A stretch of 64,000 nt of DNA from Diadema antillarum (taxonomy: Eukaryota): positions 744,001-808,000 of the forward strand of contig NW_027271394.1 of the NCBI RefSeq assembly GCF_040938485.1. The letters are read 5' to 3'. Shown here one piece after another: positions 52,687 to 53,397 of this stretch. The translations under genes were made by a program, and so were the position numbers. Position 1 is the stretch's first letter. Each line of letters starts with the position of its first letter. The notes below the pieces were generated by a model, which was given only the letters and a program-made list of their open reading frames with translations, searched no databases and had not been told where the DNA came from.

Positions 52687-53397
52687 CTGGATTAAGGAAG
52701 CAGATGACCTTGAGGCAGACGTACTCTTGAAAGCTGACCTGCAGCGCTCTGTACCTGGCAAGAGCGTTGGTGGCCGCGTCGATGATCTCGAGTCCATTTT
52801 GGCCGAACTTTCGCAGCTCGTCTTCGCTGGGGATGTAGGAGTCGAGAACGTGTGAGAGCTTGGTGAAGAGGTCCAGTGGTTGCGTGCGCATCACGGCTAA
52901 GAGCAGCAGCTCAATCAAACACGTTGTCAGCAAGGCGGTCGAATCGGAGATCGGGATTTTCGAAGTGAAGGGCAAGCGTTTGGTCCACTGGACTTCGTGA
53001 TGAAGCATGCGGTCCATCAGCTTGCAGAGAAGTTCGAAGAGCTGCGCATATCCCACCGGCTTGCTTGTACTCACTTCGAAGGGGAGCGTGATTGGTTCCG
53101 ATGGCTCGGCGACGATCAACGCCTCCACTTCGGGAAGGAGGGCGAGGTTGCGCGTAACTTCGCGCTCGGCGCGTTCGACGCGACGCGCGTACTCAGCAGT
53201 GGAGATGCCGGCAACGCTGGCAGCGTGTGCGGTGAAGTCGAAGAAGTGCTCGCTGGAGCTTGAGCCGACCGAGGTCGGGAGAAGGTGGGCGAGATTCCTT
53301 CGCTGCCGTTCGTTGGGCTCTTGGTGGTCATGCCGTTCATCTCATCTCGCGCGTATTCTTCACCAGACATGATGCGCTCGATTTCCTCGCTGGTGAG
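52687..53397 (-). CDS. NR6A1: GCNF/NR6A1 hinge + most of the ligand-binding domain (single large exon; contains an apparent 1-nt deletion frameshift)
   Basis: Acceptor ttatttgccaccag|CTC ACC AGC GAG GAA ATC GAG CGC ATC ATG TCT GGT = LTSEEIERIMSG (cf. vertebrate ISEEEIERIMSG). The LBD frame (ORF 52634-53128) reads QLFELLCKL..EVQWTKRLPF..YIPSEDELRKF..QVSFQEYVCLKVICFLNP, matching GCNF. Donor CCA G|gtaacg at 52687/52686. Confidence 0.93.

What the first reader, a model, noticed from the sequence alone, without database searches (positions are those of the whole stretch)
53116..53341. NR6A1 reading frame is broken by a -1 shift in the hinge, localised to a GC hairpin at about 53270-53285
Seen: the frame entering the exon (LTSEEIERIMSG..) stops at 53116 (..PKWRR*). 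The LBD frame is open only from 53341 downward. The exon is 711 nt but needs 3n+1 to join phase 0 to phase 1. Third-position C/G bias favours the first frame up to ATC TCG CCC ACC TTC TCC and the second frame after it (ACC TCG GTC GGC..CAC TTC TTC GAC TTC ACC). One extra C in TCCCG (plus-strand GGG 53277-53279) gives ..GISPTFSPTSVGSSSSEHFFDF... That spot overlaps the palindrome CCGACC-TC-GGTCGG. Options: (1) base-calling/assembly deletion, most likely; (2) a real null or truncating allele or pseudogenised paralogue making a DBD+hinge protein without an LBD, a potential dominant negative; (3) recoding, though there is no canonical X-XXY-YYZ slippery heptamer; (4) a cryptic intron (35, 65 or 236 nt, GT..AG, 3n+2) with weak signals.
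Basis: partly seen in the sequence, partly recalled or inferred. Interest (0 to 1): 0.72.

Follow-up and report, generated by a model that had tools for sequence, protein, structure and literature searches.

The report
Assembly error breaks intact NR6A1 gene
The apparent frameshift in this sea-urchin NR6A1 (GCNF) nuclear-receptor gene is a single base missing from the assembly: contigs built from the sequencing reads carry the base and the gene reads through intact, so the finding is ordinary.

Summary
A minus-strand exon (53397-52687, 711 nt) enters in one frame, which stops at 53116-53118. The ligand-binding-domain frame is open only from 53341 downward.

The break is not in the animal's DNA. 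Contigs built from public sequencing runs of this organism all carry one extra G after 53276, giving GGGG where the assembly has GGG at 53277-53279. This holds in three runs from three studies, and one of them may be the sample the assembly was made from. In that run the contig is at full single-copy depth with no alternative form.

With the extra base the exon is 712 nt (3n+1, as the splice phases require).

Three echinoid orthologues have a continuous frame with one more base at exactly this position. They are two TARA metagenome scaffolds and the annotated Lytechinus pictus "nuclear receptor subfamily 6 group A member 1-like" protein (464 aa).

There is no slippery heptamer. The GC palindrome is at chance frequency and is not conserved.

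Verdict: a one-base deletion in the assembly, with the gene intact. Interest is low.

The parts
53277..53279 (-). G-run (C-run on the coding strand, TTCTCCCGACC) where the assembly lacks one base; the read contigs have four
   Evidence: table 4: 'put in behind 53276: G' in X1 (depth 23.2 of 23.2), X2 (6.3 of 6.3) and X8 (2 of 2). Orthologues have one more base in this column.
52687..53397 (-). Exon encoding the hinge and the first two thirds of the ligand-binding domain of an NR6A1/GCNF orthologue. It is 711 nt as assembled and 712 nt in the reads.
   Evidence: Pfam PF00104 matches the downstream piece. tblastn with L. pictus NR6A1-like P0003 places residues 145-184 and 185-385 on the exon (alignment runs past the donor to residue 394) in two frames that meet at 53278.
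53116..53118 (-). Stop codon that ends the entering frame. It is an artefact of the missing base and is out of frame in the read-supported sequence.
53265..53278 (.). Palindrome CCGACC-TC-GGTCGG next to the site. It is a chance feature and is not conserved.
   Evidence: 3 seen against 1.66 expected. (not a palindrome in L001 or L003).
61674..61729 (-). 56-nt micro-exon encoding (A)IREDGMPGGRNKSIGPVT, the C-terminal extension of the DNA-binding domain. It ends in phase 0 and joins the exon at 53397.
   Evidence: Its only match among solved structures is 5KRB, the NR6A1 DNA-binding domain, 12 of 12 identical.
51598..51836 (-). Last coding exon (..VPNLTKVALIKDLSKQYYYVLHDHV..HAGVTGSKR, then stop). 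The acceptor is ACAG at 51840-51837, entered in phase 1.
   Evidence: Identical in the X1 read contig (record 1).

Best explanation
The frame break is a one-base deletion introduced when the assembly consensus was made. It lies in a short G-run (plus strand 53277-53279), directly after a CpG. The animal's genome has GGGG there. The exon is then 712 nt and runs from phase 0 to phase 1 as one open frame, so the gene encodes a normal NR6A1/GCNF-type nuclear receptor with DNA-binding domain, hinge and ligand-binding domain. No truncated protein, recoding or extra intron is involved. Shown: the extra base in read-derived contigs, the continuous frame in orthologues, and the restored exon length and frame. 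Inferred: that the error arose in consensus or polishing of long reads. A second homopolymer-length disagreement at about 51095 fits that, but the sequencing platform is not on record.
For: (1), table 4: a G is inserted behind 53276 in the single contig covering the site in X1 (913 nt, 52477-53388, depth 23.2 of 23.2), in X2 (223 nt, 6.3 of 6.3) and in X8 (222 nt, 2 of 2). These are three studies. (2) In X1 the contig depth of 23.2 matches the single-copy flanks (22.7) and roughly the summed depth of about 20 for the two haplotypes that separate in the adjacent bubble at 53359-53482, where one haplotype has depth 8.6 (tables 2, 3 and 8). So both haplotypes carry GGGG. (3) X1 agrees with the window at every site where X2 differs (51026-7, 52004, 52066, 53072, 53551, 53581, 53593). 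That fits X1 being the assembled individual, as the tool's flag suggests. (4) Orthologues have one continuous frame with one more base in exactly this column: L001 TTCTCCCCGACC and L. pictus TTCTCACCAACT against the window's TTCTC-CCGACC. Their proteins P0001, P0002 and P0003 are continuous. (5) With the base added, the exon is 712 nt (3n+1) and gives a 237-codon open frame that aligns end to end with P0001 and P0002. (6) Substitutions against L001 fall 4/1/28 on codon positions 1/2/3 before the site and 34/12/97 after it, in one continuous frame. The only gap that is not a multiple of three is this single base. (7) Another difference between assembly and reads, shared by X1 and X2, is also a homopolymer length: an A-run at about 51095 that is 3 nt longer in the assembly.
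Against: All four runs are kept as Logan contigs, not raw reads. Contigs drop rare variants and cannot give allele balance, so a minor GGG allele cannot be formally excluded. X1 is only flagged as 'may be' the source sample. A run of three or four bases is short for a classical long-read homopolymer error. No run on record is RNA, so there is no cDNA confirmation. Organism B (X3) gave no cover over the exon.
Confidence: 0.9

Rival explanations
1. The assembled individual or haplotype carries a real one-base deletion: a heterozygous or rare null allele of NR6A1 that would give a protein with DNA-binding domain and hinge ending ..PKWRR, without a ligand-binding domain. The other samples carry the intact allele.
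For: Contigs show presence, not absence, and drop rare variants (tool note). X1 is only a possible source. Real indels also favour short homopolymers.
Against: In X1 one contig crosses the site at full diploid depth (23.2) with no bubble, whereas true heterozygous sites 100 nt away split into two contigs (one at depth 8.6, summed depth about 20). The window matches X1 at all sites that tell X1 from X2. Three of three samples carry GGGG. The codon-position pattern shows no relaxation of constraint downstream.
Confidence: 0.07
2. Programmed -1 ribosomal frameshifting in the hinge joins the two frames during translation.
For: The two frames overlap over 226 nt (53341-53116), and a GC palindrome lies nearby.
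Against: The reads show that no shift is needed. No X XXY YYZ heptamer occurs in the entering frame anywhere in the exon. The palindrome is at chance level and is not conserved. The orthologues are plainly in frame.
Confidence: 0.01
3. A short unrecognised intron of length 3n+2 inside the hinge restores the frame by splicing.
Against: The orthologous protein sequence is collinear with the exon on both sides of the site, and no residues are missing apart from the single base. The L001 and L002 genomic scaffolds read through the region as one ORF. The reads supply the missing base.
Confidence: 0.01

Closest known systems
NR6A1 / GCNF (germ cell nuclear factor), echinoid orthologues such as Lytechinus pictus 'nuclear receptor subfamily 6 group A member 1-like' (P0003, 464 aa)
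   Same: About 80% amino-acid identity over the hinge and ligand-binding-domain exon. Same exon boundaries (..GPV | L(S/T).EEIERIMSG.. and ..FLNP | E.PNLTK..). Same C-terminal tail ..HAGVT..KR. The DBD extension AIREDGMPGGRN is identical to human NR6A1 in PDB 5KRB.
   Different: Only the assembled sequence differs, by the one missing base. The DNA-binding-domain exons lie outside the window and were not seen.
Homopolymer-length consensus errors in long-read genome assemblies
   Same: A single-base loss in a run of identical bases. It is absent from contigs rebuilt from the reads, and a second run-length disagreement lies in a nearby A-run.
   Different: The run is short (4 to 3 bases), and the platform behind the assembly is not on record here. 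The cause is therefore inferred, not shown.
Programmed -1 ribosomal frameshift sites (for example antizyme-type or viral gag-pol sites)
   Same: Two overlapping open frames in one mRNA, as assembled.
   Different: There is no slippery heptamer, no conserved downstream structure and no conservation of the frame break. The reads remove the break.

Membership tests
NR6A1 / GCNF nuclear receptor | Nuclear-receptor ligand-binding domain | tested here: met
   Pfam PF00104 on window:52688-53341:-, E 5.4e-06, 26.5 bits against a cut-off of 23.5. Nuclear-receptor LBD chains are the hits among solved structures.
NR6A1 / GCNF nuclear receptor | GCNF-type C-terminal extension of the DNA-binding domain (AIREDGMPGGRN..) | tested here: met
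   The micro-exon 61729-61674 matches only 5KRB (NR6A1 DBD) among 177,635 distinct PDB sequences, 12 of 12 identical.
NR6A1 / GCNF nuclear receptor | Two-zinc-finger C4 DNA-binding domain | not testable with these tools
   No DBD motif is found in the window. tblastn with P0003 finds only residues 126-464, so the DBD exons must lie beyond coordinate 64000. The orthologue P0003 has PF00105.
NR6A1 / GCNF nuclear receptor | Closest named relative is an NR6A1 orthologue | tested here: met
   P0003, named NR6A1-like by NCBI for Lytechinus pictus, is 79-80% identical over residues 185-394 and 77% over 145-183. The name comes from an automatic pipeline.
NR6A1 / GCNF nuclear receptor | Placement inside the NR6 clade in a nuclear-receptor phylogeny | not tested
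   No tree was built, and no set of other NR subfamily sequences was fetched.
Programmed -1 ribosomal frameshift | Slippery heptamer X XXY YYZ in the entering frame | tested here: not met
   None anywhere in the exon.
Programmed -1 ribosomal frameshift | Frame break present in the real nucleic acid and conserved in relatives | tested here: not met
   Read contigs carry the extra base. Three orthologues are in frame.
Processed or unitary pseudogene | Disabling lesion present in the reads, with relaxed constraint | tested here: not met
   The lesion is absent from read contigs. Introns are retained. Third-position excess of substitutions holds on both sides of the site.

The most novel reading that the evidence does not exclude
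The individual that was assembled really carries, on one chromosome or as a rare variant, a one-base deletion that truncates NR6A1 after the hinge. That would be a natural DBD-only allele of GCNF segregating in a sea urchin, and it might act as a dominant negative.
Probability: 0.05. Interest if true: 0.35.

Novelty: not a real feature. Interest (0 to 1): 0.06.

Why it matters
Biologically it matters little: the gene is an ordinary, intact echinoid NR6A1/GCNF orthologue. In practice it flags a base-level error in this assembly that would make gene predictors truncate, split or mark the NR6A1 model as low quality. Together with the run-length disagreement at about 51095, it suggests the assembly would benefit from short-read polishing. 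Other single-base frame breaks in this genome should be checked against reads before being read as biology.

Tried and rejected
(1) Recoding was rejected. There is no slippery heptamer, the palindrome is at chance and not conserved, and the reads remove the need for it.

(2) A cryptic intron was rejected. The orthologous proteins are collinear across the site, and the genomic scaffolds of two relatives read straight through.

(3) A paralogue or second copy was rejected. tblastn finds one copy in the window, and the X1 contig runs at single-copy depth without a bubble.

(4) The PDB sequence search of the LBD piece gave only generic nuclear-receptor hits, with ER beta on top. This says nothing about the subfamily. 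The 40-residue N-terminal hinge piece gave only chance hits.

(5) Organism B (run X3) gave no cover of the exon, although it held half of the index words. The tool says such a hole proves nothing.

(6) The search of earlier findings returned nothing, by place or by words.

(7) No tRNA-like gene was found in the hyper-abundant repeat at 52321-52554.

(8) For the frame check only, I added the read-supported G to the single exon inside a script and translated it. That sequence was aligned locally to P0001 and P0002 and was not sent to any search tool.

Full report
**What is in the assembled sequence**

On the minus strand an exon follows a polypyrimidine tract and the acceptor cag at 53400-53398. 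It begins at 53397 with CTC ACC AGC GAG.., which translates as LTSEEIERIMSG. This frame runs to ..SPSFPKWRR and stops at 53116-53118. A second frame, offset by two bases, is closed upstream and open from 53341. It reads ..PTSVGSSSSEHFFDFTAHAASVAGIS.. and continues through a nuclear-receptor ligand-binding domain to ..VICFLNP, ending at the donor G|GTAAC at 52687|52686. Pfam finds PF00104 in this second piece. The exon is 711 nt, a multiple of three, although it must join phase 0 to phase 1.

**Where the break lies**

A word search with the downstream piece found two proteins called on TARA metagenome scaffolds: P0001 on L001 (81% identical) and P0002 on L002 (53%). A second search found P0003, the 464-aa protein that NCBI names "nuclear receptor subfamily 6 group A member 1-like" in Lytechinus pictus.

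- All three relatives have one continuous frame. P0001 and P0003 read ..SPTFSPTSVGSSS.. across the site; P0002 is continuous but more diverged there.
- tblastn of P0003 on the window puts residues 145-184 on 53397-53279 in one frame and residues 185-394 on 53278-52658 in the other. The two frames meet between Ser184 and Pro185.
- At the DNA level, L001 has TTCTCCCCGACC and L. pictus has TTCTCACCAACT, where the window has TTCTC-CCGACC. The window lacks exactly one base, the third position of a serine codon. On the plus strand this is the GGG at 53277-53279.
- Over the whole exon this is the only gap against L001 that is not a multiple of three.
- Substitutions fall 4/1/28 on codon positions 1/2/3 before the site and 34/12/97 after it, counted in one continuous frame. 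Both halves have therefore evolved as parts of a single coding frame.

**What the reads say**

The run index listed nine holders of the exon from five studies, all kept as Logan contigs and none on record as RNA. I laid four of them on 50800-54300:

- X1: organism A, flagged as a possible source of the assembly.
- X2: organism A, another sample and study.
- X8: organism A, a third study.
- X3: organism B.

Table 4 reports "put in behind 53276: G" in the one contig that covers the site in each organism-A run:

| Run | Contig | Depth with the extra G |
|---|---|---|
| X1 | 913 nt, 52477-53388 | 23.2 of 23.2 |
| X2 | 223 nt | 6.3 of 6.3 |
| X8 | 222 nt | 2 of 2 |

In X1 the depth of this contig matches the single-copy flanks (22.7). 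It is also about the summed depth (about 20) of the two haplotype contigs that separate about 100 nt away at 53359-53482, where one of them has depth 8.6. A heterozygous indel would have split the contig in the same way, so both haplotypes carry GGGG.

X1 also agrees with the window at every site where X2 differs homozygously (51026-7, 52004, 52066, 53072, 53551, 53581, 53593). This fits X1 being the assembled individual. X3 gave no cover over the exon, which the tool says proves nothing.

**Consequence**

With the read-supported base the exon is 712 nt (3n+1). It translates as one 237-codon open frame..GISPTFSPTSVGSSSSEHFFDF.., which aligns end to end with P0001 and P0002. This check was made in a script on this single exon only.

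**Rivals**

- Recoding. There is no X XXY YYZ heptamer in the entering frame anywhere in the exon. The palindrome CCGACC-TC-GGTCGG at 53265-53278 is one of three perfect 6-bp inverted repeats in the exon, against 1.66 +/- 1.66 in shuffles, and 25% of shuffles reach three. It is not a palindrome in either orthologue.
- Cryptic intron. The orthologous proteins are collinear on both sides of the site, and two relatives' genomic scaffolds read straight through.
- Real null allele in the assembled individual. This cannot be formally excluded, because contigs drop rare variants and X1 is only a possible source. The full-depth unbroken contig and three samples out of three speak against it. I give it about 7%.

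**Why the error arose**

This part is inferred. The missing base sits in a short G-run directly after a CpG. A second disagreement between the assembly and the X1 and X2 contigs is also a run length: an A-run at about 51095 that is 3 nt longer in the assembly. This pattern is typical of consensus errors in long-read assemblies that were not fully polished. The platform is not on record here, so the cause is not shown.

**What the gene is**

The window holds the 3' part of an echinoid NR6A1/GCNF orthologue on the minus strand:

- A 56-nt micro-exon at 61729-61674 encoding (A)IREDGMPGGRNKSIGPVT. Its only match among all PDB sequences is the tail of the human NR6A1 DNA-binding domain, 5KRB, 12 of 12 identical.
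- The hinge and ligand-binding-domain exon at 53397-52687.
- The last coding exon at 51836-51598, ending ..HAGVTGSKR.

The zinc-finger exons are not in the window. Identity to the L. pictus protein is about 80%, so the window comes from another sea urchin or a close relative. The organism's name is coded in the run table, and I did not try to work it out. NR6/GCNF is an old subfamily present in cnidarians and bilaterians (PMC7827873). An intact copy in an echinoid is expected.

**Verdict**

The feature is not real in the organism. Interest is low. The practical value is a flagged assembly error and a caution for other single-base frame breaks in this genome.

Noticed in passing
window 52321-52554 and 50800-50916: A hyper-abundant interspersed repeat lies in the intron between the last two coding exons and in the 3' flank. 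Summed contig depth is 113,255 in X1, against about 23 for single-copy sequence. It is also very deep in X2 and in X3 (organism B), and present at low depth (13.2) in X8, with many contig joints and loose ends. No tRNA-like gene was found there.
   Followed up: partly
window 53509-53705: A tandem repeat with a 39-nt unit (also readable as 78 nt), about 5 copies at 75-84% matches, lies in the intron just upstream of the exon.
   Followed up: no
window ~51095 and 52510: There are two further differences between the assembly and the read contigs, shared by X1 and X2. An A-run about 500 nt downstream of the stop codon is 3 nt shorter in the reads. There is also an A>G at 52510, inside the repeat. 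These are probably more assembly errors.
   Followed up: partly
window 53389-53452 and 53653-53841: Blocks of linked variants appear at about half depth in both X1 and X2 (heterozygous haplotypes). 53389 lies in the exon and is synonymous (AGC>AGT, Ser). X2 also has a synonymous GTG>GTA at 53072.
   Followed up: partly
window 61730-64000 and beyond: The zinc-finger DNA-binding-domain exons of the gene are not in the window. The intron between the micro-exon (61674) and the hinge exon (53397) is about 8.3 kb.
   Followed up: partly
window 5994-6142 and 44652-44783: Runs of N, which are assembly gaps or masked stretches. A (TG/CA)n microsatellite lies next to the second one, at about 44440-44500.
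   Followed up: no
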